From: Ascidiella aspersa | Taxonomy: Eukaryota | Direction of reading: 5' to 3' | DNA: 64,000 bases | Assembly: GCA_963924565.1 (NCBI GenBank) | Contig: OZ004607.1 | Location: 32,488,001 to 32,552,000 of the forward strand | Part shown: positions 35,197 through 56,631 of the stretch, piece after piece | Position numbering within the stretch: position 1 is the stretch's first letter | How the letters are laid out: each line of letters starts with the position of its first letter | Position numbers and translations under genes: made by a program | The notes under the pieces: generated by a model | What the model was told of the DNA's origin: nothing | The model's database searches: none | The model's input: only the letters and a program-made list of their open reading frames with translations

Positions 35197-38100
35197 ATGA
35201 CGAAGTACACCGCTCGGAACATAATTCTGTTTATTCCCAATATAATAGGTGAGTATTGTTTAATACAAGTGTTGTAGTAAATTCTTACGAAATATCTTGT
35301 AAACAAAGAACGGCGTCACCCTTTATAAATATTTCTACTTTGACCTGATCAGATCATCTGTGCGAAAGTTGTCAAGATTTTTGTGCCCTTTGCCTTTAAG
35401 TGACACTTAGTTTCCAGATACGAAATTCGACAATTATACGGCTACCACAACAGAGACCTTATAAAATATAAATAGAGACTCTTCAAATTGCCTTCCCCTT
35501 TTATTATGTTTCATGTCTCGATTCTATAACATATAGAAAATTCGGACCACAAAAATAACGAGTGTGAAGAATTCAAGTTTTTATTATCGATACAAATCAA
35601 AAATACTGTGTTTTATCGACTGCAATTGTCAATATGTGAAAAAAAGTGAAAAATATATTTGCAGGTTATGTTCGGGTTGTCCTTATTCTGACGACGTTTT
35701 GGTTATTTTCTAATTGCTACAAAACTGCCTCGATATGCTACTTTTTAAGCGTCATTCTCGATGTGTTAGATGGAACAGTTGCTAGAAAATTCAAACAAGT
35801 ATACGATTTGATAACATATATTAGCTTTAACTTAAGATAGCTATATGCTTCAATATCTGTTAATATTCTAGTTGCACAGTTGTGCTCACTCTTGAGTAAA
35901 AGTATAACATTACCATGTTAGAAAAACAAACAAAGCTACAGGGTAAAAATAACCAAACTGAGGAGAAAAAGTTGTTAAATTTTTGTTTGTTGGTTCTTAT
36001 TTCGTGCCACTACCGATCACCAAATTTAAAAACCATGGTGACTATTCTTACCATTCAGATTGGCCTAGTCCTGTACATATCCTAGACAAACAGTTTACAA
36101 TCTCATGTCTATCGCTTAATGTATAGTGTTTCTCAACTCATAGGTCGCCGTTTAATTTGGCTGGTTCGCCAACTGCAACAGTTCTCATGTTTAGATTTTT
36201 CAGGATTGGCTCTGGAAAATATTTTTCCAAAATTTTAAAAATTACCGAGGCAACACGAAAACATGATTTATATTAATTAAATTAAAACTTATTGTAGACA
36301 TAAAAGGTTCAGTAGAAAGAGAATTTTATCGCCAAATTGTTACACTTAACTCAGTATTTGGCTTGTCGCAAAAAGTAGCTGGGAAACACGGAAACGGAAA
36401 TACACCGGACTGTACTTAATGCGGTCCGCCAATGCAGCTATATACGAAACCGTTTTTTTAACTTCATTAAGCCCCGTTTATTGTTATTGACGCTTTTGAA
36501 CGAAGAAATGCAAAAAAAAGTTTAAAACATAGTTTTACCTCAATGATGGACCAACTGTTTCTCTTTAAGTTGTTTCTTTTCAATAAACGTTAAATTTTCC
36601 TCGTACTGAATATCTTTGCATTGTGTCGTTTCAGTGCAGCAGACTCGGCGCCGTACTAGACCTGGTTACGGACATGCTTGGAAATGCGGGCCTGTGTATG
36701 GCCCTGGCCCATTTCTACCCACGCTACATGGTTTTATTCCAAATAAGGTGAAAACATAACTTTAACGACATGAAATTACAGATAGAAAATATTGCGTTCA
36801 AACTAAATGCGTCATGTAAAAATTGTTGCTTTTTAATCAATCAATAAGATTGTTTTACTGCCTTTTCAACAATGCGTGATAAGTTAATAGCCAATCTCCT
36901 CTCTTGAAATTTTCGACTATGCTTTATATCTTTTGTTAAGGGTGATGATTGAAGTCGGGAGTCATTGGTTGTATTTACATTCCACACTGCTTTGTGGAAG
37001 CTCCAACCACAAAGATATAGATACGACCACAGTCGACAACAACCTTATTTTCCTATTTTTTAAAGTGTATTACAAATCAATTGTAAGTCGAAAACTAAGC
37101 TGCGTTGCTTTATGATTTTAAAACAGGGAGTCGAACCGAACCCGAACCGAACCTTTATCAACCGGTTTTGAGCCATTATTTTTCCCGAACTGTAAACGAA
37201 CTTGAACCGTTTTTTAAAGGGCCGAACCAGAACTGAACCGAATATTTTCGAAAGAACTTGAACCGTAACCGAACCCGAACATGTCAAAAACGTGTTCACT
37301 CCAGCATGACGCCTTACAGAGTCGAGTTATGCCACGTTTAAAATTTTATGAAAAATATGACTATTTTAAAACGCTGCTTTTAATTTTTTTAGATTTTAGT
37401 AATGAGCTGCTTTCTTTTTAATAGGTCACGAAACTTAGATTTGATACGAGTTACAATTCAATAATCATTCTCTACATTTATTGACCCACATTTGCAACTT
37501 CTATTGCATCCCAAACGGAACTTCATAATACGGTTTTAAAAAACAATGGTCCATCCGGAGCTGAACTTTTGATTTGCTCCAACCTGAAACCGGAACTGAA
37601 CCGTATTTCGAAAAAAATCCTTGAACCGGATAAGCAAAACGGTTCGACTCCCTGATTTTTCAAATGGCATAAAAATATCATATTTTTGATTTTTATGCGG
37701 GTGGTGTCCGTTTAGATCGCTTACTATAACCAAAACGTGTATAAATGTTTTCGGGAAATATAAATTGTAAATGAGTATTTGCGAATTTTGCTGTTTAATA
37801 CATGAAGCTACATTGGAATCGATGAAAACCAAAATACAATTGTAAATTTTCGATATGGATGCGTTTTAACGAGAATTTTTACTACAGTTGTATGAACTTA
37901 AAATTTATTTGTCTGTGATTAAAACAATATTTATTAGGTTTCAATATAAAAAGCCGTTCTTACAATTTTTGCATTGTTTAGATATCACATCCAAAAAATA
38001 TCACATCCTGTTTTAACTTAACGAGCTGGTTATTTTGGTTAGAATCCGGAATTTCTATTTAGGATTCAAAGAAATAGGTTATACTGTCAGTTTTACATAA

Positions 38101-38667
38101 ACCTGCGTTAATTCGATGAAAAAAGTGATTGTAGCTTTTGTTTTAGCGTTTCAGATTCGGAGTAATTGTGGGAAACGAGATTTTCTTCATAGTGCTTCAC
38201 CTCCTTTACTTCACCGAAGGTCCATTAGGTAAGAGTCGCCATTTGTACATGCATAATGTTTATAAATGTACTGCCTGCGCTAAATTAATAGTTTGACGGC
38301 TGTGCCCCATTTTTGAGAATTAATGCGAAACATTGTTTTCTATAAACGTATATATTGTGTTAACTATTTAAAATCGTTGAATTTATGAAACTCTGTTTAA
38401 AACAGATTTGAGTAGGTCTGTATGATACTGGACTCATGTGAACTTAACAATACAGTTACCAAACCGAACCTTTAACAATACATTTACCAAACTAACCTTT
38501 TTTGTTCTTACTTCTGTTTAGTGATGGGAGTTGGCTTAGTAAGAGCTGCACTTTACCTATGTATTCCGAGTATGATTTCCAAGGTGATTATAAGCGCCAA
38601 TCAACTGATGTATGCGGTGAACCGCATTGCAACGTTTGACGCCAACGAACTCAATAAACAACAATAG
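35197..38667 (+). CDS. CDIPT: CDP-diacylglycerol--inositol 3-phosphatidyltransferase-like (PIS/CDIPT) paralog 1, 222 aa
   Basis: Exons 35197-35248, 35665-35798, 36635-36747, 36941-37082, 38147-38228, 38522-38667 (669 nt, open). CDP-alcohol phosphotransferase motif D-xx-DG-xx-AR-x8-G-xxx-D-xxx-D (LDVLDGTVARKFKQCSRLGAVLDLVTD); PIS-typical LFIPNIIGY, SHW, HK, YY, GNE, EGP. Confidence 0.93.
36124..36391. mobile_element. hAT-type MITE in CDIPT intron 2, shared by all paralogs (predates triplication)
   Basis: TAGTGTTTCTCAAC ... GCTGGGAAACACGG; equivalent copies at 43213-43459 and 52186-52571. Confidence 0.6.
37124..37654. mobile_element. MITE with GAACC subterminal repeats in intron 4 of paralog 1
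   Basis: TIR CAGGGAGTCGAACCG / CGGTTCGACTCCCTG (15 bp perfect); degenerate ATTTTAAA-like TSD; absent from paralogs 2 and 3. Confidence 0.8.
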
Positions 38668-39562
38668 TTACACATTACAGCAAGATTTATCAGCTCGTTC
38701 CAGGCTGTGTACCACCATTCCGATAGCTCACCAACAGAATTCGTAAAAGGCATATTCCGAGATGTACATCAAAAAAACCCGACTGCTGCCTAATCTATTA
38801 AGAAAAGAGCACAAGATGGATACTGTAGTCACCGTTCGTTCGGCAACGAAATGTAACAAGAAAATTTGTGGGCCTTATAATGGTCAGTTAGTATACGATG
38901 ACCATTCAGTTAAAGCCCTAGATTACGGTTATACGTTTAATATTCCAAACTTATTTAGGTAATTATGTATAAAGGTGTTTTCACAATATATCTATGCACT
39001 AAATGTTTAAATAAATTCGAAATGCTGATTTTAGCTATTTATGGCATCGAAGATGTGTTCAATATAACACAGTCGCGCTATTAGCTTTCGGCAAAGAGTG
39101 TTACTTTTAGCAATAAAAAATAAAACGCAACGCTTTTTTTTCTTAGCATTGGTCGCCCTTGATTGAGTCTTCGAAAGTATTGTTAAGACGCTGTTTTCTA
39201 TTTATTTTTAGATTGCCCTTTTTTTAAACTTGGAGGAACGATTTACCTATGCAGTTTATGTAATTAATTGCAGTTAAAATTCGGTATTGTTTTCATCTTG
39301 AAATGCATTGTTTATTTTTTTATACATTTTTCGTCTTCTTCAAGCTATACAACTGTCTTGTGCTATTTAAATGGTGTCAGTTTGCAGTAGATCGATAACA
39401 GGATATTTTTAAATACTTAGGCCTACTGAGTCGAGCATTTCGTTTTTGAGGTATTTTGTTTTGCAGTTAACGAAATATTATTTCTAGGATTATCAGAGGT
39501 ATAGTTGTTGTAAAATATTGTAATGTCCATCACGCCAACCTGTAAAACTCGCTGTTCGGCAG

Positions 39563-39978
39563 TACCGTTGCAATAACTTATGTCAATGACTTGACTTAAG
39601 TGAACTTTAGTTGTTTTCAAAATGACTTAACTTGGTTTAAGTCTTTAAGGCAAAATGACTGGACTTCCAACATCTTGGGGTTAAATTTAAGTGTTTTAAA
39701 TAACGGGTTATTTTTCTTTATTTTAGCACGTAAAACAATTTCCTTGCTATATATATTGCGTTTTTTTTTTTATTTTGTTGTTGAGATATTGCTAAGACAG
39801 CTCAATTCACGAATTTTAATGTAGTTTAACGTTTCATGTATATAACAAATACTTTACATGCTCTAATAATGACTTGACTAGTTGGACTTGACCCAGCCAA
39901 TTGGTGACTTGGACTGGGGCTTTACTTTTTATTGCAAATGACTTTACTTGGATTTCAAAGGACTTGTCTTCAACATTG
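39563..39978. mobile_element. MITE of the GACTT-repeat family
   Basis: Collinear with 9357-9736 (GACTTGACTT arrays, TTTTAGCACGTAAAACAATTT core, right end GACTTGTCTTCAACATTG). Confidence 0.65.
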
Positions 39979-40480
39979 GTCGCCATTAAATGTAAATGAA
40001 TTTAGCAATATTAAAAAAATGAATTTAGCAATAAATCAGGTCCATTTTTGGCCAAATGCCTACTGATAGCGACTTCCTTAATTTTTAACAATAGAAATAG
40101 AAACAAGGTCAAGCTGTAAGTATACTGTTTACTCTACAAGTTGTCGAATGATTTATCATAGTTAAATTCAAAGAAATAATGTGTACAGTTAGATGCCGTA
40201 TCTGTGCTAAATCAAGTTCTGGTGGATACCTTAACAAAACATTGCTACCAAACAAGTATTTATAATGAAGTGCAGCTATGTAAACAGAGCAATTGTGTCG
40301 TGCATATTAAAGTCTATTAAGAAGGCACCCGGTTCGATTTTTGCCAACGGTGCAAGGTAACTCGGATCAAATAAAGATTTTCTAACACGATTTTAAAAAC
40401 GTTAGGCAATTGCAGTGTATTACACTTTCGTTTTGACAACTGCATGGCAGATTTAAATTGAATAAAATTGCTTTCAACAT

Positions 40481-40595
40481 AAAATAGAAATTTCTCTAGA
40501 ATTTAAAATAAAATTTTCTCTAGAATTTAAAATAGAAATTTCTCTAGAATTTAAAATAGAAATTTCCCTAGAATTTGAAATAGAAATTTCTCTAA
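40481..40595 (+). repeat. Minisatellite, 24-bp unit x ~4.8
   Basis: AAAATAGAAATTTCTCTAGAATTT repeated head to tail without spacers. Confidence 0.9.
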
Positions 40596-42207
40596 ACGTA
40601 TAAGAACACATATTGAAGAAATGCAAAGAAAATTTTATCCACAACTGTTAAGAGCGAGCATCTGTATTTGTTATTAACGTGTTTGTTTTGCGTGCGCACT
40701 CGAAAAAAAATGTTCTGCTCATTTCCTTTTCCCGTTTACACTAACCCAGTTTGTCCAAAACACATTTCGCTTCTTGCGATGTTAATCTATCCGAATTCTA
40801 CTGCACGAGACAACGACATGCGCGCCTTACTGTAAGATGTTTCATTTAACGCGGAGCTGCGCTGAATTTTTCAAAATGTACAACACATCTATAAGCAACC
40901 TAACAGTATGCACTTTGAAGTGCAATGGCAGTTTGTTTAGTTTTGCTTAGCGGAGTTCAGATAGCACGGTGGTCATGTTTTCCTGTTGAAATTTACACAA
41001 ACTTTTTTAATATTCAAAATGCAAACTAAATTATTGGTCATAATTAATTTTATTTTGGTATTATGAACCCAAGACTGAAAGTTTCAATTGGTTTCGGTTC
41101 AACCCTTATCTTAGCCCATTTATAATACGTTTAATGCGTTTCGAATATAATTAAATGTGTAATATAAATGTGCTATGACATATAAATGCTCTGTATAATG
41201 TATAGAATAGATACGCTGTATAAGATTTATGGATATTGTCAGGTAAAGTCCGCGATATTTACGGAGTCGTACTTACAACACTTGTTTTACTTTTAATCTT
41301 AACTTTTCTACATGGGAATGCTTTAAAAGTCCTTTTCGGATTTATGAAACTAAAGAGACTTATTAGATCTTTATGGGCTGAATAATAGCAAAATATCTGA
41401 ATTTTAACTGATTTGTAGCGATTTATAAAATATTTAAAAGTATTTTGCAATTCACATGGATTTATTCAGATTTTTTTCGAAATCCATCAGATAATTTTAA
41501 TAGGGGTGGGATTTAATTGTTGTTTTCAAATCATAACGCATGCCTTAGTTTGTCATCAAAGGCTTTTCTAGGATGTTTCTTGGCACAAATATAGTCGCCT
41601 CTCTCTGCTGTTTTTTAGGCAAAGGAAAGTATGTGTAAAAAAGAGCTTAAAAATATGTATAAAAACACGCAAACCCGGAAAAAAATTGGTTTTGAGCTAA
41701 AAAAAATACCCTTGTTTGTATTTTTAGATTTTAGATTTAGAATATTACTTAGTGGCGCCAACATTCTGCAGATTTAGTAGAAAAATTGTTTCAAACTTAA
41801 AAAAAGAGCTAAATAGTAAGACAAAAACAAAGTGCCGGCCACCATCGAAATGGCCTCAAAAGCTGAATAAATCGGTTGTGCATGTCTAGAGTTGGGTAAC
41901 CTTTTTTGACTGGTGTGGCCGCTAGTGTTTTCTGCAATTTGGCTGAACGGCTTGCGATACAAAATGACTAAACACTCTGTCGTCAACAGTTGTCGTCTCG
42001 TGCAAGGCATTTGATTCATCCTAAAAGACGAAGCTCAACTGACCAACGTACTGTTTGAGCCCGGAAACTACATCAGTTCCAGTAGCCTATTTTTTACCGT
42101 TAATTCAATATTTTGTCTACCTAGAACGTATTGACAGACAGGGCCAGTGGTTTTCGGTTTTCGTGTGTGACCTAAAGAGAGTTTTTGTTTAATTTTACCG
42201 AAGGCGC

Positions 42208-45200
42208 ATGATGAAGTACACCACCCGAAACATACTGCTGTTTGTACCCAATATAATAGGTGAGTAGGCTTTTTTTTTTAGTTTGGTAATAAAATAATCT
42301 GCACAGAATGTGTAGTAAACGAAAAAAACGTGCTTTATTATTATTATAGAAACGTAAGGCACACAGCTTAGGAATATTTGTACTTTGGCCTGATAAAGCA
42401 GTTTGTGCGAAAGCTTGTTAAGATTTCCATACAATTTTTTTGTCAGGAGTGGCATCTGGGATTTCAAATTAGGCGAATACTGCTACCAGCAAAGAGCCTG
42501 TAAATAAAAACTCAGCAATTGTCCAATAAACGATACACACACATATGCGTGTTAACGACTGTGATCTAGCCCTTCTGAATCTGCTTTTTGACCAACGATT
42601 ACGGCTTACAAATAATTAGTACACTGAAAGCCATTGCAGACTAACCGCATCGGTCGATCAATGATACAAGCAATGTAGGCTAGAAAAACAACGAGCCTGC
42701 AATGGGGTTCCAACTCACGACCTCCGGCAATTTTCTGGAACGTCGATTTGTCTTCCACTTTTATGTTGTTGTTTCGATTCTGTAACATATACGAAAAATA
42801 TGACCACAAAAATAACGTGTATTAACATTTCATGTGGTTCATTACTTTTATCGATGCAAATGCAAAATGCTGTGTTTTTTAAAGCGATCGTCGAAATAAC
42901 GTTAACAAAATTTGTTTGCAGATTATGTTCGGATTGTCCTTATTCTGACGTCGTTTTGGTACGTTTCTGATTGCTACAAAACAGCCTCGATATGCTACTT
43001 TTTAAGTGTCGTTCTGGACGAGTTTGACGGAATGGCTGCAAGAAAATTTAAACAAGTAAACGATTTGATAATATAAATTAAACTTAACTTAATATATCTA
43101 TACGCTAAAATATCAGTAAATTTTCTGGTTGGACAATAAATTGTGCTCTACCGATAAGCAACATTAGAAGAACATATCTACTGTTCTTACGATTCGGATT
43201 GACCTAGAGAAACTGTGTTTCCAAACCTATGTCGTCCTTTACTTTGTCTCGTTCGCCAACTGCAATAGCTCACATGGTGAGATTTATCGAGATTGGATGT
43301 GGGCATTATTCCTCGAAAAGTTTAGAAAACACGAAGGAATTACGTAAAGATGGCTCATAATAATCGAATTTTTAATTTATTAATATACAAAAGTTCAGTG
43401 AAGAGGTTATGGTCGCCAAAACTTTGATGTTAACGCGAAAAACCAGCTGAGAAACACTGAAATACATCAGATGGTACTTAAATCAGTGTTGTATGTAATT
43501 ACAATCGACAGTTTTTCCTTGCTAGTTCGTTTTTAGCTTCGTCTATTGTTTAGGGTTTTCACTAACTCTTCCTAACAGAACAGTCTTCAAATTTATAATA
43601 AAAATATTATTGACTCCGGGCTAACCCAAGTGGTCTTATTTTGGTTCTAATTTTTTGCACGCAAAAATAAATCATTGTATTTTATTGTTTCAGTGCAGCA
43701 GAGTCGGCGCCGTACTAGACCTGGTTACGGACATGCTCGGAAATGCGGGCCTGTGTATGGCCCTGGCCCATATCTACCCACGCTACATGATTTTATTCCA
43801 AATAAGGTGGAAACATAACCGTATAGGCATGAAGTTACAGATAGAAAGTATTGCGTTCAAACTAAATGCGCCATGTAAAAATGATGCTTTTTAACCAATC
43901 AGTAAAATTGTTTTACTGCTTGTTGAACAAAGCGTGATTAGTTGATGACCAATTGTCTATCTGGCAATTTTCGACTTGATTTATATATTTTGTTAAGGGT
44001 GCTGATTGAAGTCGGAAGTCATTGGTTGTATATGCATTCCACACTGCTTTGTGGAATATACAGCCACAAAGATATGACCACAGTCAGCAACAACCTTTTA
44101 AATGCCTATTATACGACAATTGTAAGTCGAAAATTCAGCTACGTTGAATATAATTTTAAATGCATGATTTTATGATTTCTATTGGGTGTTGTGTGGATTT
44201 TGATCGAAACCGAATTTTAATCGATCTTGGCAGAAAGTTTCCAGGGGAATATAAATTGTAAGTGATGATTTGCGACTTTTGCTGTTTAATAAACGTGCTA
44301 CATTAGAATCCATAAAATCAGAATACAATTATTGGTATCAAAATATCATTAAATGTCACTATGTAAAGACTTTCGTACAATTTTTGCAATAACGTGAGAC
44401 TACATTTAAATTATAAAATAAGAATTTGAGTTAAACAAGCTGTTTATTTTATTGGGAATCGAAATTACTTTTTAGGATCCGAAGAAACGGGTAACCGGTC
44501 ACTACACCGCAATTATTTCAAATAATATAATTAAGCGATTGTAACTTTTGTTTTTAGCTTGGCAGTTATGTGCTAGTGTATGGAAACGAGATATTTTTCA
44601 TAATGCTTTACCTTCTTCACTTCACCGAAGGTCCATTAGGTAAGAGCCGTCATTTGTACGTCATGCATATTGTTTATAAGCATATTAGGTCTATATAATA
44701 GGACTCCAGCCATAAGACCGAAATAAGAACAACATCAACGTCGGAATAAAACGCAGTTCGGAATAAGACCAAAATACGACTATAATACCGTAGTATCGTA
44801 TAAATCGGAATAAGTCCTAGGCCCGTCAGACTATGACCTAAATGGTCAGAATCACGCCTGTACAACACTTTACATAACCCATAACCCTAAGTACATCACT
44901 AACTCCCCTAATAATTTCAACCCTAATCCATTTTGCAACCCCACTCAGTACCCACAAATAACCTTAAATATGGCTAAAATTTCAATGCCAAAACAGCAGA
45001 GTCCTAACGGCGCCGAGAAAACTATAGGCCGCCCAAACGTCGACACACAGACGGCCGATGCCAGACCGAAGGCCCCTGATCGTCCCATATCTTCTCGCTA
45101 CAATTACAGGCTTGATTTAGGCCGTTTAGACCTTATTTCGATGATTTTAATGCGTATTCCGACTTATTCTGTCGTGGATATTACTGCGTATATGGCTTTA

Positions 45201-46273
45201 TTATTTCGTTCGTCTTAATAGTATGGTTTTTATACATATTTCTGCTTTAGGTCAGGTTAAAAATAACCCGTCCAACTCCCGAGTACGTCTACTGCCAAAA
45301 AAATAAACCCGAGTCCGACTCCCGAATCCCGAGTCCGACTCCGGTCAAATGTGCGATTTCCTGATTCTACTCTACAGCCTGTATTCCGCCAATTTACGTA
45401 ACTAAAATAACGTGGACATTCAGTAATCCACTTCTAGGGGTGTCATATAGTTTATTAACTCACAATACATGGTTTTAATATATTCCACCATATGCTATAC
45501 TACCTTTATAATTTCCAGTTGGCGGCCATATCATTTTAAATTTGGTACTGTGCATGAGCATGTCAGACTCGAGACGCGAGTAGTTTAACGTGGTCTTACT
45601 CAAGTCCCGAGTCCGACTCCAGCAAAGCAAATCGAATACTCGAGTCCAATTTTTTTTTAAGGTGTTTTACCAAACCTTAAAAAAAAAACCTGCTAGAGTC
45701 CCGAGTCCGACACCGACACCGCAGCCCTGCTTTAGGTACCGTTGCTTTTTAGGTCATATTTGTGTTCCCCACTTGGCATCAGGTATATACATAATATCGG
45801 ACTTCCCCAGTAATAACTAGCAAGCAGCTTGTCCTTTACAAATGCCATGGCTAGCGTTGTTTCTAGCCCTAATTTTAGGGGCTTATGGTATTATTGTGTG
45901 TTCCCGTTTGGAATTTGTGCACCGACATTTGATTTTTAGAACGAAACACTTTGTTGTGCAAAAATATATTTTATTTCAATTAATTAAAATCATTGGATTT
46001 TTTAAAACTCTGCATAAAAAGAATTGAAGTATGCCTATATATAATAGTAGGCATATATGAAGTTAAACGTTGATAACTTTACATTACCCAACCGAGCATA
46101 AGCTTTTTTGTTCTTACTTCTTTTTAGTGATGGGAGTGGGCATCGTAAGAGCTGCACTTTACCTGTTTGTTCCTATTACGATTTCCAAGGTGATTGTAAG
46201 CGTCGTTCAACTGGTTTATGCTGTGAACCGCATTGCAACGTTTGACGCCAACGAACTCAATGCACAACAATAG
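42208..46273 (+). CDS. CDIPT: PIS/CDIPT-like paralog 2, 216 aa
   Basis: Exons 42208-42259, 42922-43055, 43694-43806, 43998-44121, 44558-44639, 46128-46273 (651 nt, open). Motif LDEFDGMAARKFKQCSRVGAVLDLVTD; NIIGY is changed to NIIDY across the exon1/2 junction; weak exon-3 donor GTGGAA. Confidence 0.92.
42525..42728 (-). mobile_element. tRNA-derived SINE-like element (5' truncated)
   Basis: Reverse complement reads GGAGGTCGTGAGTTGGAACCCCATTGCAGGCTCGTTGTTTTTCTAGC...GCCGTAATCGTTGGTCA..., homologous to 53005-53210 and 3372-3462. Confidence 0.65.
44701..45769. mobile_element. GG-ended MITE with imperfect long TIRs (paralog 2 intron 5), interrupted by a nested hAT MITE
   Basis: GGACTCCAGCCATAAGACCG ... 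GGTCATATTTGTGTTCCC; homologous to 56036-56395; central AACCC-rich tract. Confidence 0.6.
45253..45729 (-). mobile_element. hAT MITE (GAGTCG-repeat family), nested
   Basis: Right end CCGCAGCCCTG, left TIR partly deleted; perfect TSD CTTTAGGT (45245-45252, 45730-45737); single CTTTAGGT at the empty site in paralog 3 (~56355); inverted copy of 46989-47413. Confidence 0.85.
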
Positions 46274-46988: not shown

Positions 46989-47413
46989 CAGGGCTGCGGA
47001 GTCGGAGTCGGACTCGGGACTCGAGGAGTCGGTTTGTTTTTGCTGGAGTCGGACTCGGGACTCGGGACTCGAGTAAGACCTTGTAAAACTACCCGAGTCC
47101 CGAGTCCGACATGCACATACGCAGTACCGAATTTTAAAACTGACATGGCCGCCAAATGGAAATTGTAAAGGTGGAATATTATATGGCGGAATATTTTCCA
47201 TCCATGTATTGTGAGTGAATGAAGGACACCCCTATAAGTGGATTGCTGAATATCCACGTTATTTTAGTTAGGTAAATTGGTGAAATACAGGCTGTAGAGT
47301 CCGGGCCGGACTCGAGACTCGACAAAATCGCACATTTGACCGGAGTCGGACTCGGGTTTATTTTTTTGGCCGGAGTCGGACTCGGGTTATTTTTAACCGA
47401 CTCCGCAGCCCTG
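46989..47413 (+). mobile_element. hAT MITE (GAGTCG-repeat family)
   Basis: TIR CAGGGCTGCGGAGTCGG / CCGACTCCGCAGCCCTG (17 bp perfect); perfect TSD ATTTAAAT; empty site with a single ATTTAAAT in unit 1 (39365-39372). Confidence 0.92.
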
Positions 47414-47819
47414 ATTTAAATGGTGTCAATTCGCGGTAAATCGTTACCAGTATTTTTTTTTAGAAAATTATTCATTACCGGCTCAAACATTTCATTTTCG
47501 AGGTATTGTGCTCTGCGGTTAAAAAAACATTTGTTCCAAGATTAGAGAGTTAGAATAGTTTTGCAATGCCCAGTCGCATGTCATATTGAGTTTTGCAATT
47601 TAGATTGGCAAATGTTTAAAAGATTAGAGCCAGTCGCATGTCATATTGAATTTTCCAAGACACTCGCTGTTTGTCTTCAGAGGTAACATTGTTAAAAACC
47701 CACATTCACAACGCTATGTTGATGGAAAAGGCAACAGCAATCTTTCTTTTCTTATAGTGGACTTTCTTTTGTTATAGTGAAGTAGACTTAGAGATAATAG
47801 ACTAAAAATATATTACTTT

Positions 47820-47896
47820 TTTAATTTTTTCACGGCCCCCTTGAAAAAGGCTCATGGCAACCTAGGGGGCCATGGCCCACAGGTTGGGAACCCCTG
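47820..47896. mobile_element. Right end of a hAT-type MITE
   Basis: CACGGCCCCC...GGGGGCCATGGCCCACAGGTTGGGAACCCCTG. Confidence 0.5.
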
Positions 47897-49035: not shown

Positions 49036-50164
49036 CAGTGGCGTATCCAGGTGGGTTGGGAGTTCGGACCACCCTTTTTTTCGTAATCGACATTACTATT
49101 GTGTCAGGGTGTAACTCACCGCCCAAAGTTGTGATGTTTTTAATGTAATTGGGTCACGCGTCTCCAGCTATTGCGAAACCAAAATCAAATGCAAAACGCC
49201 GATTTTCGTCTCTTGGTTGGTCGGCCGTAAACGCAAAATAGTTTTTTCTCTTTCGCCTTTCGTTATTCGCTCAGGTTGGTTAGCAAGGGTGTATTCGACA
49301 AACGACAACGCTAAGTCAAGCCTCTTCCCTTATTTATCTTGCTAGAAACGTCGAGTTGGTTCTTAACCTTTTTTACTTCATGGCTCATTTTCGCTTTACA
49401 AAAATTCTGTGGCCCAGTAAATTGTTATGAAAGAAAAAGGCTATAAAATAGGTTTAGTTTGCACTAACAGAAGCAGGGCATATTTCAAGAGTATTTATTT
49501 AACCGTGCATTAGTGAGATTTTTGCTGCTGACCTTAATCGATCAATTCATCTATTTTTGGAGGGGTTGAAGAGAGTGCACAACAAATGATTTGTATCCCA
49601 GAAGAAGCTATTTTGGAAATTTATCTATTTATACTTGCAATGTTAATACTATGTGTACTAATTATTTCTGCAGTGACACTATCACGAAAACAATAATGTG
49701 CCCGTTTCTTTGGATATCCTTTGACGCTTTTCAGCCTGTATATTCAGAAGTGTTCACTAGCCTCCTAGTTTCGCTTTCGCTTGGTTTTAAATCCCACATA
49801 AACCACTCGTGTTTTCCTTGCCACGCTTTTATCTTGAATGCCCTGCTTTACCGCAGTAAACATCACGCTAGTTTTTAGGCATAGTGACGTAAAACGAACA
49901 GTTAGTTGTAAACATCAAAAACAAGTTTAGGCCTAACGCGTATAGGAAGAATGTTAAGTACAACAGAAACTAATTTGTGACAGACACAAATGAAAATAAA
50001 TTCTTAAATAAATCTAGCTGTTTTATATTGGTCTATGGCCCATCTCAAATGATTTCATGGCCCACCAGTGGGCCATTATGCATTAACGTCAGATGTTAAA
50101 TAGGGTAATTCCCTAAGTTGAAAATTCGGGTCACCACCTTTTTTATATTCTGGATACGCCCCTG
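49036..50164. mobile_element. Non-autonomous DNA transposon with a nested hAT MITE (~49355-50078)
   Basis: TIR CAGTGGCGTATCCAG / CTGGATACGCCCCTG (14/15); no TSD recognised. Inner element GGTTCTTAACCTTTT...ATGGCCCACCAGTGGGCCAT. Confidence 0.55.
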
Positions 50165-51316
50165 TTTGTTGTAAAGGGCTGCGTTATATGCAATGTTGAA
50201 TTTTGTAAGTCTTATAGAATTGCGCAACGAATCCCTTCAAACGAACTAAGTCATACTAGGGCTACAAGGTTATTATACAATGTGAGCTTTTAATGTAGGA
50301 TACATAACATACCGTAGCCGCTACATACCGTACTACGTGTTTTTCAGAGTGACGTGATACATTTCAAAGAATTAGTTATATTATGGTTTGCCTAGTGCAT
50401 TAATAATAAAAGTAAAGTTACACAAATCTAAAGACATAATGAGCAGTTTTTAAAATTGCATATAACAGCCGATGGCAGGGAAGATGTTTAGGTTTTGGCT
50501 TTAAGTATTGGCATACTTGTGTCAGGCGCTTTAAAGCAGAATGTACAGCGGAATCTGTTTGGCTGCTTTAACAGTGCCCCTTCGTCGAGTATTAACGTGA
50601 GACAGTCTGTGTAACGGTTTCGTTTTAACCATATTCTTTTCAGGAAATATTGCTACCGCTAGGCAGGAGTACAGAATTAAAAGTAATTCTACGACGACGT
50701 CATATTTTGTTTGCAATTCGTTGTAAATCACCTCTGACGCATTACGTTTATGACCTATTGAGATTAGGCACTACTCAATGCCCAACATTAAGGTGGTTAT
50801 GCAATATAACAAAATGGTTGCGCTTAAGAGCAAAATATTTCATTGAATATTGGCGTCAACATCTGCGGTTTAGTTAAAAAAGTTGTTTAGGGCGTTTCGC
50901 AACAAAATAGTAAGGCGCAAAAGAGTGCCGGCCAACATCAAAATGGCCTCAAAAGCTGCATATTGCCTGTATTGGACGCGCATGTCTAAACTCGGGTAAC
51001 CTTTACGCTACTGATATGTCCGCTAGTGTTTTGTGCGGTATGCTGACTGGCCTGTGATACAGAATGACGAAATAGTCTAACGTCAACGGTTGTCATCTCA
51101 CACAAAGCGCTTGAATCATCGTAAAAGACGACGCGCAACTAAGCAACGCAATTTGAGCCCGGAAACTACATCAGTGTCAGTCGCCTATATTTTGCCTGCG
51201 TTCCGATAACGTTAAAATTAAATAAGTTGTTTTACCTAGAACGTTGTGAACAGACAGCGCCAGTGGTTTTCGGTTTTCGTGTCAGACCAAAAGTAATTGT
51301 TTTTTACAGAAGGCGC

Positions 51317-54300
51317 ATGATGACCAAGTACACCGCTCGAAACGTTCTGCTGTTTGTTCCCAATATAATAGGTGAGTATGCATTAAATTGAGTTATGTGA
51401 TAAAATATCCTGCACAGAATGTGTAATAAATAGAATAAACGGCGTTATTTTACATTTTGCCGCTTCCAACATGACAAAAATATATCAAAAAACGTAAGGC
51501 ACACAATTTACAAATATTTTTGTTTTGACCTGACGAAGTCGTTTGTGTGAAATCTTGTTAATTTTTCTATGCATCTTGTCGTTAAAAGTGCCACTTGATT
51601 TCCAGATTTAAAATTCGACAAATACTACAACCAGGTTTTGAACAGACACTTTGGAATTGTCTTCTTTTATTTTGTTTCATGTCTCAATTCTGTAACAAAA
51701 ACGAGAAATATGACAACAAAAATAACGTGTATAACGTTTCATGTAACTCTTTACTTTTGTCGATGCTAATGCAAAGTACTGTGTGCACTTTTTTACTGCG
51801 ATTGTCAATATAAACTCAACAAAATTTGTTTACAGGTTATGTTCGAATTGTCCTTATTCTGGCGACGTTTTGGTACGTTTCTGATTGCTTCCAAATAGCC
51901 TCGATATCTTACTTTTTAAGCGTCTTTCTGGATGAGTTTGATGGAAGGGCCGCACGAAAATTTAAACAAGTACGATTTGACGAGATAAAAATAAACCTAA
52001 ACTATGTATCTTTATGCTCAAATATCTATTAACATTTTAGTTGCACAAGTGGGCTTGCACTTGAGTGCAAGTATGATATGCCCGTTACTTTGAAACACAA
52101 TTTTACCGATCACCAAATTTAAGGATCATGTTTACTGTTCTTAAGATTCAGATTGACCTAAAAAACAGTTGTCTATCGCTTAATGCAGTGTTTCTCAACT
52201 CATGGGCCGCCGTTTACTTTGGCTGGTTTGCCAACTACAACAGTCCATTTGGTTACATTTATCGAGATTGGTTCTAGGCAATATTTCTCGATACATTTAA
52301 AAAAATATTGAGGCAACACGAAAACATGACTCATATGAATTAAATGAGAAATTATTAATGAAAAAGTTCAACAAAAAAAGAATCATAACACCGTTTACTA
52401 TGTAACACACTTCTACCGAAAACCAGTTAAGTCTATGTTTTCTGTTCTTACGATTCAAATTGGCTTAGACTTAGAGAAAGAGTGTTTCCAAACCCATGGA
52501 TCGTCATAACTTTGACTAGTTCGCCAACTTTAGCTTTGCTGTTAACACAAAAAAATAGCTGCATGAACACTAAAAATATCAGGTGAAATTAAGTTAGTTT
52601 GATATGCAATTAGATGCAAGAGTTAATCGTTCCTTTGCTCGTTTTAGCTCCGTCCATTGCTTGTTTAAAACAGTGGTTCTTAACCGGGGTGCCGCGGCAC
52701 TCTAGGGTGCCATTTTTAACGTTCAAGGGTGCCGAGAGATATTTCAAATTCTTTAGGATTCCAATTCTTCCTCTATTGGTAAGCTTCTCGTTATATATTT
52801 TTTATGTACGATATAAGTGCAAAAAATTAAAAGATTTTCAACCTTGTTGCACAATTAATATGCTGTTTCAATGTCGTTTTCTGTAACGTTACAGTAAACA
52901 ACTCAGCAAATATCCAAGCAAGGGTGAAGCGAACTCTTCCGAACAGAACAGTGTAAAAACGTTTATTGAAATACTCGCCGAATCTGTCGGTCCCGGCTTG
53001 ACCGTAGGTCGTGAGTTCGAACCTCACTGCAGGCTAGTTGTTTTTCTGGCTTGCTCTGCTTGCATCAAAGATCGACAGATTGGGCGAGTCTGAGATGGCT
53101 TTTCGGTGTACTATTGATAAGGAAGCCGTAATCGTTGGTCATAAAGCAGCTTCCGAGGGGATAGATCACAGATGTTATTAAACACATATGTTTGTGTGTC
53201 TTTCATTTATTAAAATACTATTGACTTATTGCTGAGCCTTCTGGTTGTATTTGGTTCCTTAAATACTTTTACACGCATCAAAAACCAATGTATTCTGTTA
53301 TTCAGTGCAGCAAATTCGGAGCCGTGTTAGACCTGGTTACGGACATGCTCGGAAATGCGGGCCTGTGTATGGCCCTGGCCCATTTCTACCCACGCTACAT
53401 GATTTTATTCCAAATAAGGTAAAAACCTAAATTTACCGACATGAAATTCAATTATAAAATATTGTGTTTAAACGAAAAATGTTGCTTTTTTACCAATCAG
53501 TAAAATTAGGCCTACTTCCTTTTGAACAAAGAATAGTTAATTAATCGCCCCTCTTGCAATTTTCGACTATGCTTTATATCTTTGGTTAAGGGTTCTAATT
53601 GAAATTGGAAGTCACTGGTTGTACTTGCATTCGACACTGCTTTGTGGTAGTTCAAGTCATAAAGATGCAACCACAGTAAAGAACAACCTTTTAAAAGTGT
53701 ATTACACATCAATTGTAAGTCGAAACCTTTTAAAAGTGTATTACATCAATTGTAAGTCGCTGCCTTGGAATATAATTTTGTATGGAATAAGATTGATTTT
53801 CTGATTTCTATCTAGGTGTTGTTTGTTTGATTTTTATCTAGGTGTTGTTTGTTTGATTGAAACCAAATATAAATCGATCTTCTAGAAATGTTCTCGGTAA
53901 ATATGAATTGCAAGTGAGGATTTGTAATCATAGAATATATTCAATACATGAAGCGACATTTGACTGATAAAAATAAAAAAAACAATTAAAATTTTCGGTA
54001 ATGTATATAGGTTTTGATAAGATTTATTAAATTTCCAACTTGTCTCAAGAAAAAAGATGTTCTTACAATTTTGGTAATATTTAAAGATCATTTAAAAAAA
54101 TAAAAAAAATATTTGAATTGAACAAGCTTTTTATTTTTGTTCGAAACCGACATTACTACTTCGTATTGAAAAAATAGCGGCGCTCTTTCACTTATGTACG
54201 TGAAAAGTTATGCAAAAAAAATAAATAATAATACCGCATACCACAACGCATATTGTTTGGGTTAGGGTGCGGGTTAGTGTTTGGGTGAGGGTGGGTCAAG

Positions 54301-56631
54301 TAATATTATGTTTATTATTAATAATACCTTGACCCACCCTCAACCAAACGCTAACCCGCACCCTAACCCAAACAATATGCGTTGTGGTATGCGGCATTTG
54401 AAGAAAGTTTTTTTTTTATTAATTTTTACGTACAATAGTGAAAGAGCGCCAAAATAGCTTACCTGTCACTTTCTGCATACATCTGTTTTAGTTAGAAGAA
54501 TTTAAATAAAGCGATTGTAACTTTTGTTTTCAGCCTGTCAGTTATGGAGTAGTTTATGGAAACGAGATTTTCTTCATAATGCTTTACCTTCTTCACTTCA
54601 CCGAAGGTCCATTAGGTAAGAGCAGTCATTTGTCTAGCCCAGGGGTTCCCAAACTTTTTTGGTCTGTGGCCTAAATGTCTATAATATAGCGATTCGTGGC
54701 TCACCCTGTGCTTTCAAGATGTTGAGCAACATCGGTCTTGAGCGCTTCATCCAACTCGGAACCGCAAACTCACAAAAAAGAAAAACAAGCCTAAATTCGT
54801 TTGAAAAACGCAAGATTGGCAACATTGCTACTCACTCACTTTGAAATTTGAACTGCTATGTCCAACACAGAGGCTAAATCCCATTGTTAGGAGACAAGGA
54901 CCTTTCTAGCTAAGAAATTATTGTTTTTCAAAACAAAGCGCATAATATCCACAGCAGGGGTGGGCAATTATTTTTAACCGCGGGCCGCATGAAAAACTTA
55001 AAATGCTGTGGCGGGGAAGGTCAAAAATAAGATCTCAAATACACGCAATATAACGTCATACTCTGACGGGATAAAACAAATAAGCTAACGAACTTGTTAT
55101 TACGTTTGTAGTTGTACAAAATATTGCAGTTTAAGTTTAATTTAAAGAAGACGTCGCACAAAGCGCGAAATACTTGCGACTATATTTGTTTTAAAATGCC
55201 AACTTTAATTTAAATTTAGTGGGGGCGTGACGCATTGAACACAGATAAAAAATATAGACTTCATATCTTGTTGATATATTGGCATGTATCAAGTTGTAGG
55301 GCGCATTGACCCAAAAGTTAAGATTAAAATACGTAAAAATTTCTCACAAAAAACTTACAATGTTTTTGCTTTTTGAGGCTTTAAGTTACCGATGTGTTAC
55401 TTGCGGGCAACGGCCATATTGCAAAGACAGTATAAATCGGGTTCATTAACTAAATTAGGTTGACAACATGTAAATCGGTATGTTTCAGAAAACGATAATT
55501 TTTTAGAAAATGGTATTAATTTTAGAAAACGGCTGGTATTTAGTTCATAATTTATAGAAGCGCAAAAACTAAATAAATATTAGGATAAGTTTGTTAAACT
55601 TTCGTTGGGGAGAGCGACATAATGCAGACGCTTTTTGTCTGTAAAGACGCCAAAAAATCGCTTGGCGCTCACGAAAAAGACAGAAGGGATTCACGCGAAG
55701 CGCGGAAATAATTTCCACAAGAGTTTTGCGGGAAAGGGTCTGGAAAGAGTGTTTAAGATAACGTACAACCAAACGTGTAGAAACTCGCCCTTGTTTTAGC
55801 TTATATGCATTTTAGCAAAAATAAGCCGCGGGCCGGATCCGGCATTTGGAAACCACTGGTCTAGCCTACATACATAATGTTTATCAACGTATATTTCCTG
55901 CGCTTGGCGTTTGTGCATTGTTTGAGTTTTTACGCGAAACTCCATGTTGTATAAACACACTTTTTGTTTTAATTATTTAAAATCACTGGATTTTAAAACT
56001 CTGTTTTAAACAGATTCAAGAAGGTCTATATAATAGGAGTCCAGCCATTAGACCGAGATAAAGAACAACAGCAACGTTAAAATAGAACACAGTTCGAAAT
56101 AAGATCAAAATATAGGGCTAACACCTAATGGTCGTATAGTACCGTCTAAACCGGACATAGTCCTAAATCCGTCGTAATAAGACCTAAATGGTCAGAATCA
56201 GACCTGAACAACCTTTTACCTAACCCGAAACCCCACCCCTAAGTACATTACTAACTCCCCTAATAATTTCAACCATAACCCATTTTCTACCCCCCCCGCG
56301 TATTTCGCTTTATAAGGTTGTTGGTTTAATTCTACGGTTTTATAGATTTGTCTGCTTTAGGTATTGTTGCTTTTTAGATCTTATTGTGTGTTCCCATATA
56401 ATACTGGACATATGTGAATTTAAAAGTTGGTAACATTACAGTAACTTAACCGAGCTTAACACTTTTTGTTCTTGCTGCATTTTAGTGATGGGATTAGGCG
56501 TCGTAAGAGCTGTACTGTTTCTGACGACTCCTATTATGATTTCCAAGGTGATTATAAGCGTCGTTCAGCTGGTTTATGCTGTGAACCGCATTGCAGAATT
56601 TGACGCCAACGAACTCAATAAACAACAATAG
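51317..56631 (+). CDS. CDIPT: PIS/CDIPT-like paralog 3, 217 aa
   Basis: Exons 51317-51371, 51836-51969, 53306-53418, 53591-53714, 54534-54615, 56486-56631 (654 nt, open). Motif LDEFDGRAARKFKQCSKFGAVLDLVTD. Confidence 0.92.
52671..52930. mobile_element. Left part of a hAT-type MITE
   Basis: CAGTGGTTCTTAACCGGGGTGCCGCGGCAC...AGGGTGCC; no right end found; absent from paralogs 1 and 2. Confidence 0.5.
53005..53210 (+). mobile_element. tRNA-derived SINE-like element
   Basis: T-arm/B-box GGTCGTGAGTTCGAACCTCAC followed by a conserved body and a TG-rich tail; three copies in the window. Confidence 0.7.
53685..53759 (+). repeat. Tandem duplication of the exon-4 end plus 5' splice site (paralog 3)
   Basis: AACCTTTTAAAAGTGTATTAC(AC)ATCAATTGTAAGTCG at 53685-53722 and 53724-53759. 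Confidence 0.9.
53802..53858 (+). repeat. 26-bp tandem duplication
   Basis: TGATTT(C/T)TATCTAGGTGTTGTTTGTT x2. Confidence 0.85.
54179..54450. mobile_element. Palindromic foldback MITE with GG termini and 8-bp TSD (Merlin/MULE-like, unclassified)
   Basis: GGCGCTCTTTCACT...AGTGAAAGAGCGCC, with an inner near-perfect ~65-bp inverted repeat; perfect TSD AAAATAGC (54171-54178, 54451-54458); absent from paralogs 1 and 2. Confidence 0.88.
54640..55858. mobile_element. Composite hAT non-autonomous element (1.2 kb) in paralog 3 intron 5
   Basis: CAGGGGTTCCCAAA / TTTGGAAACCACTG; perfect TSD GTCTAGCC (54632-54639, 55859-55866); contains a second hAT left end CAGGGGTGGGCAA at ~54955. Confidence 0.85.
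56036..56395. mobile_element. GG-ended MITE with imperfect TIRs in paralog 3 intron 5
   Basis: GGAGTCCAGCC...GTGTTCCC; TSD ATATAATA (56028-56035, 56396-56403); empty site AGGTCTGTATGATACTGGAC in paralog 1 (~38414). Confidence 0.75.

What the first reader, a model, noticed from the sequence alone, without database searches (positions are those of the whole stretch)
35197..56631. Three intact tandem PIS/CDIPT-like genes: candidate neofunctionalised phospholipid-synthase subfamily
Seen: three complete, open 6-exon genes (222/216/217 aa) whose frames survive despite heavily diverged, transposon-filled introns; the paralog-1 exon-4 insertions (6 and 12 nt) are in frame. Known: CDIPT is normally a single-copy essential housekeeping gene in animals. 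Inference: a retained, diverged triplet suggests selection for a new or specialised CDP-alcohol phosphotransferase activity rather than dosage. This is the best candidate for an undescribed system in the window.
Basis: partly seen in the sequence, partly recalled or inferred. Interest (0 to 1): 0.75.

Follow-up and report, generated by a model that had tools for sequence, protein, structure and literature searches.

The report
Three extra, diverged PI-synthase gene copies
A sea-squirt genome carries, beside its normal phosphatidylinositol synthase gene, three intact tandem copies that evolved very fast, kept the catalytic core but changed residues on the side that holds the second substrate, so they may make or handle a lipid differently.

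Summary
Three six-exon CDIPT-like genes (222, 216 and 217 aa) lie head to tail at 35197-56631. All 15 introns are GT-AG, and the 6-nt and 12-nt insertions are in frame.

A fourth, compact gene on another chromosome (C4) is the canonical CDIPT, 84% identical to the Phallusia mammillata protein. It has the same exon sizes and intron phases.

The three copies are under selection:
- dN/dS is 0.30-0.58.
- CDS indels number 1-3 per pair, all in frame, against 17-21 expected from the introns.
- A neutral simulation gives a chance of about 0.1 per copy of staying free of stops.

All eight signature residues of CDP-alcohol phosphotransferases are kept. All three copies have replaced residues that are invariant in 189 animal CDIPTs, among them the Arg after the catalytic Asp (now Met). 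A mycobacterial homologue needs that Arg for activity.

RNA support is thin: a few strand-consistent reads on copy 2 exons and none on the last two exons of copy 1. No close relative turned up in the protein databases. New function is plausible but unproven. Two look-ups of earlier notes showed no such finding on other DNA.

The parts
35197..38667 (+). Copy 1 (c1), CDIPT-like gene, 6 exons, 222 aa: 35197-35248, 35665-35798, 36635-36747, 36941-37082, 38147-38228, 38522-38667
   Evidence: all five introns are GT-AG and the CDS is 669 nt; exon 4 has +2 and +4 codons in frame; exon 2 scores 31.4 bits on PF01066; five private changes at sites at least 90% conserved in animal CDIPT; no RNA reads on exons 5-6.
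42208..46273 (+). Copy 2 (c2), CDIPT-like gene, 6 exons, 216 aa: 42208-42259, 42922-43055, 43694-43806, 43998-44121, 44558-44639, 46128-46273
   Evidence: all introns are GT-AG; exon sizes 52, 134, 113, 124, 82 and 146 nt are identical to the canonical gene on C4; low, strand-consistent RNA depth of 0.25-0.94 in the four bins that hold most of exons 1-4, and 0 in the pure intron-2 bins. The split codon between exons 1 and 2 reads GAT (Asp) where 99% of animal CDIPTs have Gly.
51317..56631 (+). Copy 3 (c3), CDIPT-like gene, 6 exons, 217 aa: 51317-51371, 51836-51969, 53306-53418, 53591-53714, 54534-54615, 56486-56631
   Evidence: all introns are GT-AG and the CDS is 654 nt, with one extra codon in exon 1; shortest branch and fewest private changes at conserved sites. 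Expression was not tested, because the one read-laying run did not reach it.
35764..36673 (+). c1 catalytic signature D-x2-D-G-x2-A-R-x8-G-x3-D-x3-D, split over exons 2 and 3 by intron 2, followed by Met instead of the invariant Arg
   Evidence: Translations: DVLDGTVARKFKQ | CSRLGAVLDLVTD-M. Arg at this column in 189 of 189 animal CDIPTs.
43021..43732 (+). c2 catalytic signature split over exons 2 and 3, followed by Met
   Evidence: DEFDGMAARKFKQ | CSRVGAVLDLVTD-M.
51935..53344 (+). c3 catalytic signature split over exons 2 and 3, followed by Met
   Evidence: DEFDGRAARKFKQ | CSKFGAVLDLVTD-M.
37083..38146 (.). c1 intron 4, holding an interspersed repeat of about 540 bp (copy-specific insertion)
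   Evidence: 44 matches listed, 1730 first-look candidates (40 scored), 70-76% identity.
44640..46127 (.). c2 intron 5, holding two interspersed repeats of about 470 bp and about 390 bp
   Evidence: 89 matches listed, 8407 first-look candidates (40 scored).
54616..56485 (.). c3 intron 5, holding an interspersed repeat of about 885 bp
   Evidence: 56 matches listed, 4737 first-look candidates (40 scored), 71-89% identity.

Best explanation
The three genes are functional, lineage-specific paralogues of the animal phosphatidylinositol synthase gene (CDIPT) in a phlebobranch-like ascidian.

Origin. The six-exon canonical gene, which still sits on another chromosome, was duplicated at the DNA level. 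The extra copy then evolved about nine times faster than the canonical gene (stem 1.15 against 0.13 substitutions per site). It was later triplicated in tandem, and the introns grew by copy-specific transposon insertions.

Likely mechanism. The proteins keep the whole metal- and CDP-binding signature, including the catalytic-base Asp. They therefore most likely still bind CDP-diacylglycerol and transfer a phosphatidyl group in the ER membrane. The side of the pocket that holds the acceptor alcohol has been remodelled and then held fixed in all three copies:
- The Arg right after the catalytic Asp became Met.
- Ser and Asp, one and two helix turns before the invariant His-Trp, became Arg and Glu.
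- The invariant Cys of the next conserved segment became Ile or Val.

The likeliest outcome is a phosphatidyltransferase with altered acceptor handling, either a different acceptor or strongly changed kinetics for inositol, expressed at a low level or in a restricted place.

What is shown: gene structure, intactness, selection, the residue changes, and the existence of the canonical gene.

What is inferred: retained catalysis, that the changed residues line the acceptor pocket, and any change in substrate.
For: Intactness and selection.
- 15 of 15 introns are GT-AG and there are no internal stops.
- dN/dS is 0.58, 0.35 and 0.30 for the three pairs. Fisher tests give p = 0.029, 1.7e-6 and 4.7e-7.
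- Alignable intron parts carry 26-33 indel events per kb, of which 1 of 14, 1 of 29 and 1 of 23 are multiples of three. The CDS pairs have 2, 3 and 1 indels, all in frame, where 17-21 would be expected.
- A neutral simulation at 0.09 substitutions per site leaves 8-12% of copies free of stops.

Origin from the canonical gene.
- Only four loci in the 308.6-Mb genome match exon 2 and exon 3: the three copies and C4:14158311-14158711.
- The C4 gene has exon sizes of 52, 134, 113, 124, 82 and 146 nt and the same phases as c2, with introns of 60-158 bp.
- The C4 gene is 173/206 identical to Phallusia mammillata CDIPT. It differs at 0 of the 65 scored columns that are at least 90% conserved in 189 animal CDIPTs.

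Tree (41 taxa, six exon partitions, LG+G4).
- The triplet is monophyletic at 100/100.
- It is sister to the own canonical gene at 63/86.
- It lies inside a Phallusia+Ciona clade at 94/95.

Catalytic core kept.
- The signature DxxDGxxAR-x8-GxxxDxxxD is intact in all three copies.
- Clarke 2015 (PMC4634129, passages) defines these eight residues, names D4 as the catalytic base, and places the acceptor pocket between TM4 and TM6.

Remodelled acceptor side.
- Of 64 conserved columns, 47 are retained, 7 are changed identically in all three copies, and 4 are changed in all three to different residues.
- These changes include R75M, D103E and C147I/V, at columns that are 100% invariant in 189 sequences. 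S99R lies on a split codon (AGG).
- The profile alignment to M. tuberculosis PgsA1 places R75 on R94.
- Grave 2019 (PMC6506517, passages) reports that this position is always K or R and lines the alcohol pocket. R94K strongly reduces activity and R94Q nearly abolishes it.
- The 16 residues from that Met onward are identical in the three copies although very unlike the canonical gene.

Expression. Reads on c2 fall almost only in bins that hold exon sequence (apart from a repeat bin and about 0.06 in one intron-1 bin), on one strand only.
Against: - Selection is relaxed (omega 0.3-0.6). Against intron divergence, dN is 0.5-0.7 of neutral.
- c1 has five private changes at highly conserved sites, among them an invariant Tyr changed to His. 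It shows no RNA read on its last two exons.
- RNA evidence for c2 is about 1x coverage, from 24 laid reads in total among 7.8 million records read, and no splice joint reached the listing threshold. c3 was not tested.
- Loss of the K/R after D4 nearly abolishes activity in the bacterial enzyme. The same change here could mean loss of catalysis rather than a new specificity.
- No orthologue in another species was found, so long-term conservation is not demonstrated.
- The placement of the triplet on the tree is not significant: alternative placements give p-AU of 0.50, 0.37 and 0.17.
Confidence: 0.5

Rival explanations
1. The three copies are ordinary PI synthase isoenzymes. They still make phosphatidylinositol from CDP-DAG and myo-inositol. 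They are kept because expression has been partitioned by tissue, stage or stress, or because they prefer different CDP-DAG molecular species, as reported for the two plant isoforms.
For: - All eight signature residues are kept, as are H107/W108, H122/K123, Y136/Y137 and N150/E151. In all, 47 of 64 conserved columns are retained.
- Gene structure is the same as in the canonical gene.
- There is a precedent. Arabidopsis PIS1 and PIS2 differ in preference for saturated versus unsaturated CDP-DAG and feed different PI pools. This is taken from a review (PMC2841259, passages) that cites Lofke 2008, which was not read.
- The low c2 signal in one RNA data set fits restricted expression.
Against: - Residues invariant in 189 of 189 animal CDIPTs are replaced in all three copies: R after D4, D103 and C147.
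- The equivalent R-to-Q change nearly abolishes the bacterial enzyme.
- The stem branch is about nine times longer than that of the canonical gene. That is more than simple partitioning of expression would need.
Confidence: 0.25
2. The copies are catalytically impaired. Either they are non-enzymatic partners that pair with the canonical enzyme (CDP-alcohol phosphotransferases crystallise as homodimers) or with other proteins, or they are duplicates on a slow path to loss, with c1 furthest along.
For: - The positively charged residue after D4 is lost, and it is critical in PgsA1.
- Omega is relaxed, especially c1-c2 at 0.58.
- c1 has five private hits at conserved sites and shows zero RNA depth on exons 5-6.
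- Homodimeric architecture is stated in Clarke 2015.
Against: - Frame and splice sites are intact in all three copies despite an intron indel load that predicts 17-21 events per CDS pair.
- All four metal-binding and catalytic Asp residues, and the G and AR of the signature, are kept. A pure scaffold would not need them.
- dN is significantly below dS in all three pairs.
Confidence: 0.2
3. The triplication is an assembly artefact: collapsed haplotypes or a mis-joined repeat written out as three genes.
For: The window is a single assembly. The two DNA-like runs that hold it come from one study and might include the source sample.
Against: - The copies differ by 12-25% at the DNA level, far above the difference expected between haplotypes.
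- They carry different transposon insertions.
- Short-read contigs of X1 and X2 match copy-specific sequence in 30 of 30 bins at single-copy-like, even depth.
Confidence: 0.02

Closest known systems
Canonical animal CDIPT / PI synthase (EC 2.7.8.11), here the genome's own gene on contig C4 and Phallusia mammillata CDIPT (P0160)
   Same: - Same family: Pfam PF01066.
- Same length, about 216 aa.
- Same six coding exons with the same sizes and phases.
- Same eight-residue signature.
- Colinear over the whole length.
   Different: - Only 47-54% identical to the canonical gene.
- Stem branch of 1.15 substitutions per site.
- 11 of 64 highly conserved columns are changed in all three copies. These include the invariant Arg after D4 (Met), D103 (Glu) and C147 (Ile/Val).
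- Introns are 172-1870 bp with transposons, against 60-158 bp.
- Three tandem copies.
Plant PIS1/PIS2 isoenzymes (Arabidopsis)
   Same: More than one PI-synthase gene in a single genome, with reported functional partitioning by CDP-DAG species and downstream PI pool (PMC2841259, passages).
   Different: The review describes the plant pair as highly similar to each other. Here the extra copies are about 50% diverged from the canonical gene and have lost invariant residues. No biochemical data exist for them.
Bacterial PIP synthases (M. tuberculosis PgsA1, PDB 6h53; Renibacterium PIPS, 5d91/5d92)
   Same: Shared signature and fold family. The profile of animal CDIPTs aligns to PgsA1 over the signature at E 1e-4. 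The residue after D4 is Arg in both PgsA1 (R94) and canonical CDIPT.
   Different: PIP synthases use inositol phosphate and carry extra Arg residues for its phosphate. The triplet has Met at the R94-equivalent position, a state the authors say does not occur among the enzymes they aligned. Their supplementary alignment could not be seen.
Choline/ethanolamine phosphotransferases (CHPT1/CEPT1; PDB 9uet, 8gyw)
   Same: Same signature. They naturally lack a basic residue after D4: the CHPT1 chain reads ...CDS... in the alignment.
   Different: They have extra C-terminal helices for a lipid acceptor, about 390 aa, and use CDP-choline or CDP-ethanolamine as donors. The genome has its own such gene (L003). 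The triplet is clearly CDIPT-derived and not of this branch.

Membership tests
Class I CDP-alcohol phosphotransferases (Pfam PF01066) | Signature D1xxD2G1xxAR...G2xxxD3xxxD4 with eight absolutely conserved residues (Clarke 2015) | tested here: met
   All eight residues are present in c1, c2 and c3, spanning exons 2 and 3.
Class I CDP-alcohol phosphotransferases (Pfam PF01066) | Profile match above the curated cut-off | tested here: met
   Exon 2 alone scores 31.4, 25.3 and 27.8 bits against a cut-off of 22. The own-genome scan hit c1 exon 2. Exons 3 and 4 alone gave no hit (0 of 6 pieces), as expected for pieces of 37-46 aa.
Class I CDP-alcohol phosphotransferases (Pfam PF01066) | Six-transmembrane-helix fold of the soluble-acceptor members | not testable with these tools
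The fold is inferred only from gap-free colinearity with canonical CDIPT.
CDIPT / phosphatidylinositol synthase clade of animals | Closest relatives are CDIPTs, and the genes branch inside the animal CDIPT tree | tested here: met
   The best summed exon identity is to Phallusia CDIPT, at 101-116 of 204-207 residues. The ML tree places the triplet inside the tunicate CDIPTs, but alternative placements are not rejected.
CDIPT / phosphatidylinositol synthase clade of animals | Shared gene structure with the canonical gene | tested here: met
   Five introns at the same positions and phases. c2 exon sizes are identical to those of the C4 gene.
CDIPT / phosphatidylinositol synthase clade of animals | Residues invariant in animal CDIPT outside the general signature (R after D4, D103, C147, L143; P0160 numbering) | tested here: not met
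   These columns are invariant in 189 of 189 sequences. The triplet has M, E, I/V/V and R/-/S. The own canonical gene keeps all of them.
CDIPT / phosphatidylinositol synthase clade of animals | CDP-DAG:myo-inositol phosphatidyltransferase activity | not testable with these tools
   Needs a biochemical assay or pis1 complementation.

The most novel reading that the evidence does not exclude
The triplet encodes CDP-diacylglycerol-dependent phosphatidyltransferases that have switched acceptor away from myo-inositol, to another cyclitol, polyol or small alcohol. That would give this ascidian a phospholipid head group, or a dedicated lipid pool, not made by any known animal enzyme. The switch would have been made by replacing the basic residue after the catalytic Asp and re-lining helices 4 and 5.
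Probability: 0.15. Interest if true: 0.8.

Novelty: new variant of a known kind. Interest (0 to 1): 0.45.

Why it matters
PI synthase is usually treated as a single, strongly conserved housekeeping enzyme in animals (general knowledge, not tested here).

This genome holds a natural experiment. An extra copy escaped that constraint and changed exactly the residues flanking the catalytic base. It was then kept and multiplied.

If the proteins are active, they show which residues set acceptor specificity in eukaryotic PI synthases. No solved structure of such an enzyme turned up in the PDB sequence searches. They might also reveal an unknown lipid.

If they are inactive, they would be a rare case of a retained pseudo-enzyme derived from a lipid synthase. 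Either outcome can be tested directly by expression in yeast.

Tried and rejected
- Alignment A1. One database CDIPT plus all 18 exon pieces was misaligned by MAFFT for exons 1, 4, 5 and 6. It was not used for any search.
- Representatives search with c2 exon 2. It gave 40 hits at E<=1e-3. The top hit (P0001, 760 aa, 15 short stretches) is a repetitive false match. The best real matches are 59% identical, no closer than generic CDIPTs.
- Profile search A2. 445 hits, of which 120 were listed. The arthropod relatives of its first row dominated. None of the stored proteins was triplet-like.
- Profile search A3. 981 hits, of which 120 were listed. It returned tunicate canonical CDIPTs only. A calibration shows the triplet's own exons sum to 290-313 bits against a listing floor of 281.5. 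Piecewise scoring under-counts: the own canonical gene sums to 289, while its 84%-identical relative scores 372 as a whole protein. Close orthologues should therefore have been listed. More distant ones may have been missed.
- Search with the open frame around c3 exon 3. No candidate shared three words. This blank is weak, because even this species' own exon ORFs are not in that database.
- PDB search by sequence with P0160. 0 hits at E<=0.001. The profile search gave 15 hits at E<=10, aligned over the signature region only, so the TM4-TM6 residues could not be mapped onto a solved structure.
No model and no fold search were made.
- AU test of three alternative placements of the triplet. None was rejected, so I do not claim a date for the duplication.
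- Paper searches. The listings showed no paper on CDIPT paralogues in tunicates and no solved eukaryotic PI synthase. This is a statement about those five searches of the held library only.
- Supplements are closed. The family alignment behind 'position 94 is always K or R' (Grave 2019, Supplementary Fig. 3) was not seen.
- I guessed that the ORF at 15676-16254 starts a homeobox gene. Pfam gave no hit, so I do not claim it.
- Yeast Pis1 residues that set the Km for inositol are recalled only. No held paper confirmed them, so they are not used as evidence.

Full report
**What is there**

The window is G000:C1:32488001-32552000 of a 308.6-Mb assembly in 75 contigs.

A self-comparison of 34-58 kb shows three head-to-tail units of about 7-9 kb. 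They are 74-91% identical where alignable.

I rebuilt the exon models from the sequence. Each unit holds a six-exon gene on the + strand, and all 15 introns are GT..AG. The CDS lengths are 669, 651 and 654 nt, giving 222, 216 and 217 aa. The first ATG is at 35197 and the last stop ends at 56631.

c1 exon 4 has two in-frame insertions of 2 and 4 codons, and c3 exon 1 has one extra codon.

Exon 2 of each copy passes the Pfam PF01066 gathering score on its own.

The long introns that I tested (3 of 3) hold different interspersed repeats, each with thousands of first-look candidates in the genome. The insertions therefore came after the duplications.

**A canonical gene exists elsewhere**

Searching the whole genome with c2 exon 2 and c2 exon 3 gave four loci each: the three copies and one place on contig C4.

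That locus (L015) holds a compact gene with introns of 60-158 bp. Its six exons have the same sizes (52, 134, 113, 124, 82 and 146 nt) and phases as c2.

Its exons are 173/206 identical to the protein that UniRef names CDIPT of Phallusia mammillata. It agrees with the majority residue at all 65 scored columns that are at least 90% conserved in 189 animal CDIPTs.

Earlier notes of this scan call the genome a sea squirt. The CDIPT tree and this identity agree with that.

The rest of the family in the genome is as follows:
- L001 is a cardiolipin-synthase-like gene.
- L003 is a choline/ethanolamine-phosphotransferase-like gene.
- L005 is an exon-like hit that I did not resolve.
- Two genes lie on bacterial-looking contigs.

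**Not an artefact**

Two DNA-like runs of the same species hold 0.82 and 0.54 of the sampled words of 35100-45000.

Their contigs cover 30 of 30 bins of 38130-44129, at even depth outside two high-copy repeats.

They come from one study and may include the assembly's source, so this is support rather than independent proof. Separately, the copies differ by 12-25% and carry different transposons.

**Selection**

The figures below cover 213 in-frame codons, with split codons left out and exons treated one by one.

| Pair | aa identity | dN | dS | omega |
|---|---|---|---|---|
| c1-c2 | 76.5% | 0.134 | 0.229 | 0.58 |
| c1-c3 | 77.9% | 0.127 | 0.368 | 0.35 |
| c2-c3 | 82.6% | 0.097 | 0.322 | 0.30 |

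dN is below dS in every pair, with Fisher p of 0.029, 1.7e-6 and 4.7e-7.

The alignable intron parts give K = 0.18-0.21 and 26-33 indel events per kb. Almost none of those indels is a multiple of three (1 of 14, 1 of 29 and 1 of 23). At that rate 17-21 indels are expected per CDS pair. The observed numbers are 2, 3 and 1, all in frame.

Random substitution at 0.09 per site leaves only 8-12% of copies without a stop.

Three of the four exon variants listed in the other samples' contigs are synonymous.

The frames are therefore being kept by selection, though the protein is under looser constraint than a housekeeping enzyme.

**What changed**

Against the own canonical gene the copies are 47-54% identical, and dS is saturated at about 1.7.

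All eight signature residues D1xxD2G1xxAR...G2xxxD3xxxD4 are present. Clarke 2015 defines these residues (PMC4634129, passages).

The 64 columns that are at least 90% conserved in 189 animal CDIPTs divide as follows:
- 47 are retained in all three copies.
- 7 are changed identically in all three: A24I, Y29W, T63S, L72V, R75M, D103E and R213L.
- 4 are changed in all three but to different residues: M31, A50, M146 and C147.
- 6 are changed in one or two copies. c1 has five such changes, c2 two and c3 one.

Two further changes lie on split codons:
- The codon between exons 3 and 4 reads Arg where 95% of animals have Ser.
- The codon between exons 1 and 2 of c2 reads Asp where 99% have Gly.

R75, D103 and C147 are invariant in all 189 sequences.

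The 16 residues that follow the last signature Asp are identical in the three copies, yet unlike the canonical gene. A new state was reached on the stem and has been held since.

**Meaning of R75M**

A profile of 28 CDIPTs aligns over the signature to M. tuberculosis PgsA1 (PDB 6h53). In that alignment CDIPT ...TDR... lies on PgsA1 ...CDR....

Grave 2019 (PMC6506517, passages read) makes these points:
- R94, next to D93 (D4), lines the alcohol-substrate pocket.
- The position 'is always positively charged (K or R)'.
- R94K strongly lowers activity and R94Q nearly abolishes it.

Clarke 2015 places the acceptor cavity between TM4, TM5 and TM6, and names D4 as the catalytic base.

The other shared changes lie four and eight residues before the invariant His-Trp of the next helix, and in the following conserved segment. 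It is my inference that they face the same cavity.

**Origin**

A partitioned ML tree was built with 41 taxa, six exon partitions and LG+G4. Its main features are:
- The triplet is monophyletic at 100/100, on a stem of 1.15 substitutions per site. The own canonical branch is 0.13.
- The triplet is sister to the own canonical gene (63/86).
- Both lie within a Phallusia+Ciona group (94/95).

Forcing the triplet outside own+Phallusia, outside the phlebobranch canonicals, or outside all tunicate canonicals costs 3.9, 7.6 and 15.3 lnL units. None of these is rejected, with p-AU of 0.50, 0.37 and 0.17. The date of the first duplication is therefore open.

The shared intron positions show a DNA-level duplication, not a retrocopy.

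**Expression**

One RNA data set of the species was laid on 38130-44129, with 7.8 million records read, about 6% of the data. Only 24 reads fell on the stretch, most of them on repeats.
- c1 exons 5 and 6 had no read.
- The four bins that hold most of c2 exons 1-4 had mean depths of 0.25, 0.69, 0.5 and 0.94, all with the first mate on the minus strand.
- The pure intron-2 bins had 0.
- No joint reached the three-read threshold.
- c3 lies outside the stretch.

This is weak evidence that c2 is transcribed at a low level. It says little about the other two copies.

**Relatives elsewhere**

None of the following found a triplet-type protein:
- an exhaustive HMMER search of 1.84 billion cluster representatives with c2 exon 2;
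- two profile searches of the 5.8-billion-cluster database;
- a search with the open frame around c3 exon 3.

Calibration indicates that the triplet itself or close orthologues would have been listed.

These databases do not seem to hold this species' own genes. No eukaryotic genome collection could be searched. The blank is therefore only suggestive.

**The joined step**

**Verdict**

The reading 'neofunctionalised subfamily' is the best single hypothesis, but it remains unproven. Ordinary isoenzymes, and catalytically impaired or decaying copies, remain live alternatives.

The genes are a new variant of a known enzyme family, of moderate interest.

Noticed in passing
G000 contigs C35 (L002:1375-3442) and C53 (L004): These two small contigs of the assembly look bacterial. 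GC is 0.46-0.47, against about 0.34 in the L001, L003 and L005 loci. On C35 an intronless pssA (139 bits against a cut-off of 107) sits next to msrP (485 bits against 207). They probably come from a symbiont or a contaminant.
   Followed up: partly
window 53685-53759: A tandem duplication of about 38 bp copies the end of c3 exon 4 together with its GTAAGT donor (94.7% identity; sequence). Using the second donor would add 38-42 nt. I did not work out whether that breaks the frame. The model uses the first donor.
   Followed up: partly
window 40930-41129 and 42530-42729: Word depth in the DNA contigs is extreme, 6,500 to 150,000 against about 40-90 elsewhere. These are very high-copy short repeats, one between c1 and c2 and one inside c2 intron 1. 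RNA reads on the second lie on both strands.
   Followed up: no
window 40480-40594: A short tandem array of a 24-bp unit lies between c1 and c2. On the minus strand it reads as REISILNS repeats in an ORF.
   Followed up: no
window 45278-45647 and 47017-47386: An inverted pair of about 370 bp at 79% identity. One arm lies in c2 intron 5 and the other downstream of c2. These are probably two copies of one transposon family.
   Followed up: no
window 61431-61715 (- strand): An ORF with a rhodopsin-family 7TM match (PF00001, 41.1 bits against a cut-off of 30.5). It is a GPCR exon downstream of the array.
   Followed up: partly
window 43772: Contigs of both other samples read T instead of A here. 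That turns Ile into Phe in c2 exon 3, the residue that c1, c3 and the canonical gene have. Depth is raised at this place, so contigs of the other copies may be laid here instead.
   Followed up: partly
window 14000-30000: A GC-rich block (0.45-0.52, against 0.33-0.40 around it) lies upstream of the array. An ORF at 15676-16254 gave no Pfam hit. I did not identify the gene content.
   Followed up: partly
G000:C2:26152798-26153319 (L001) and G000:C1:26806373-26806702 (L003): The genome's cardiolipin-synthase-like and choline/ethanolamine-phosphotransferase-like genes appear as single open frames of 302 and 386 aa without introns. The CDIPT genes, by contrast, have six exons.
   Followed up: partly
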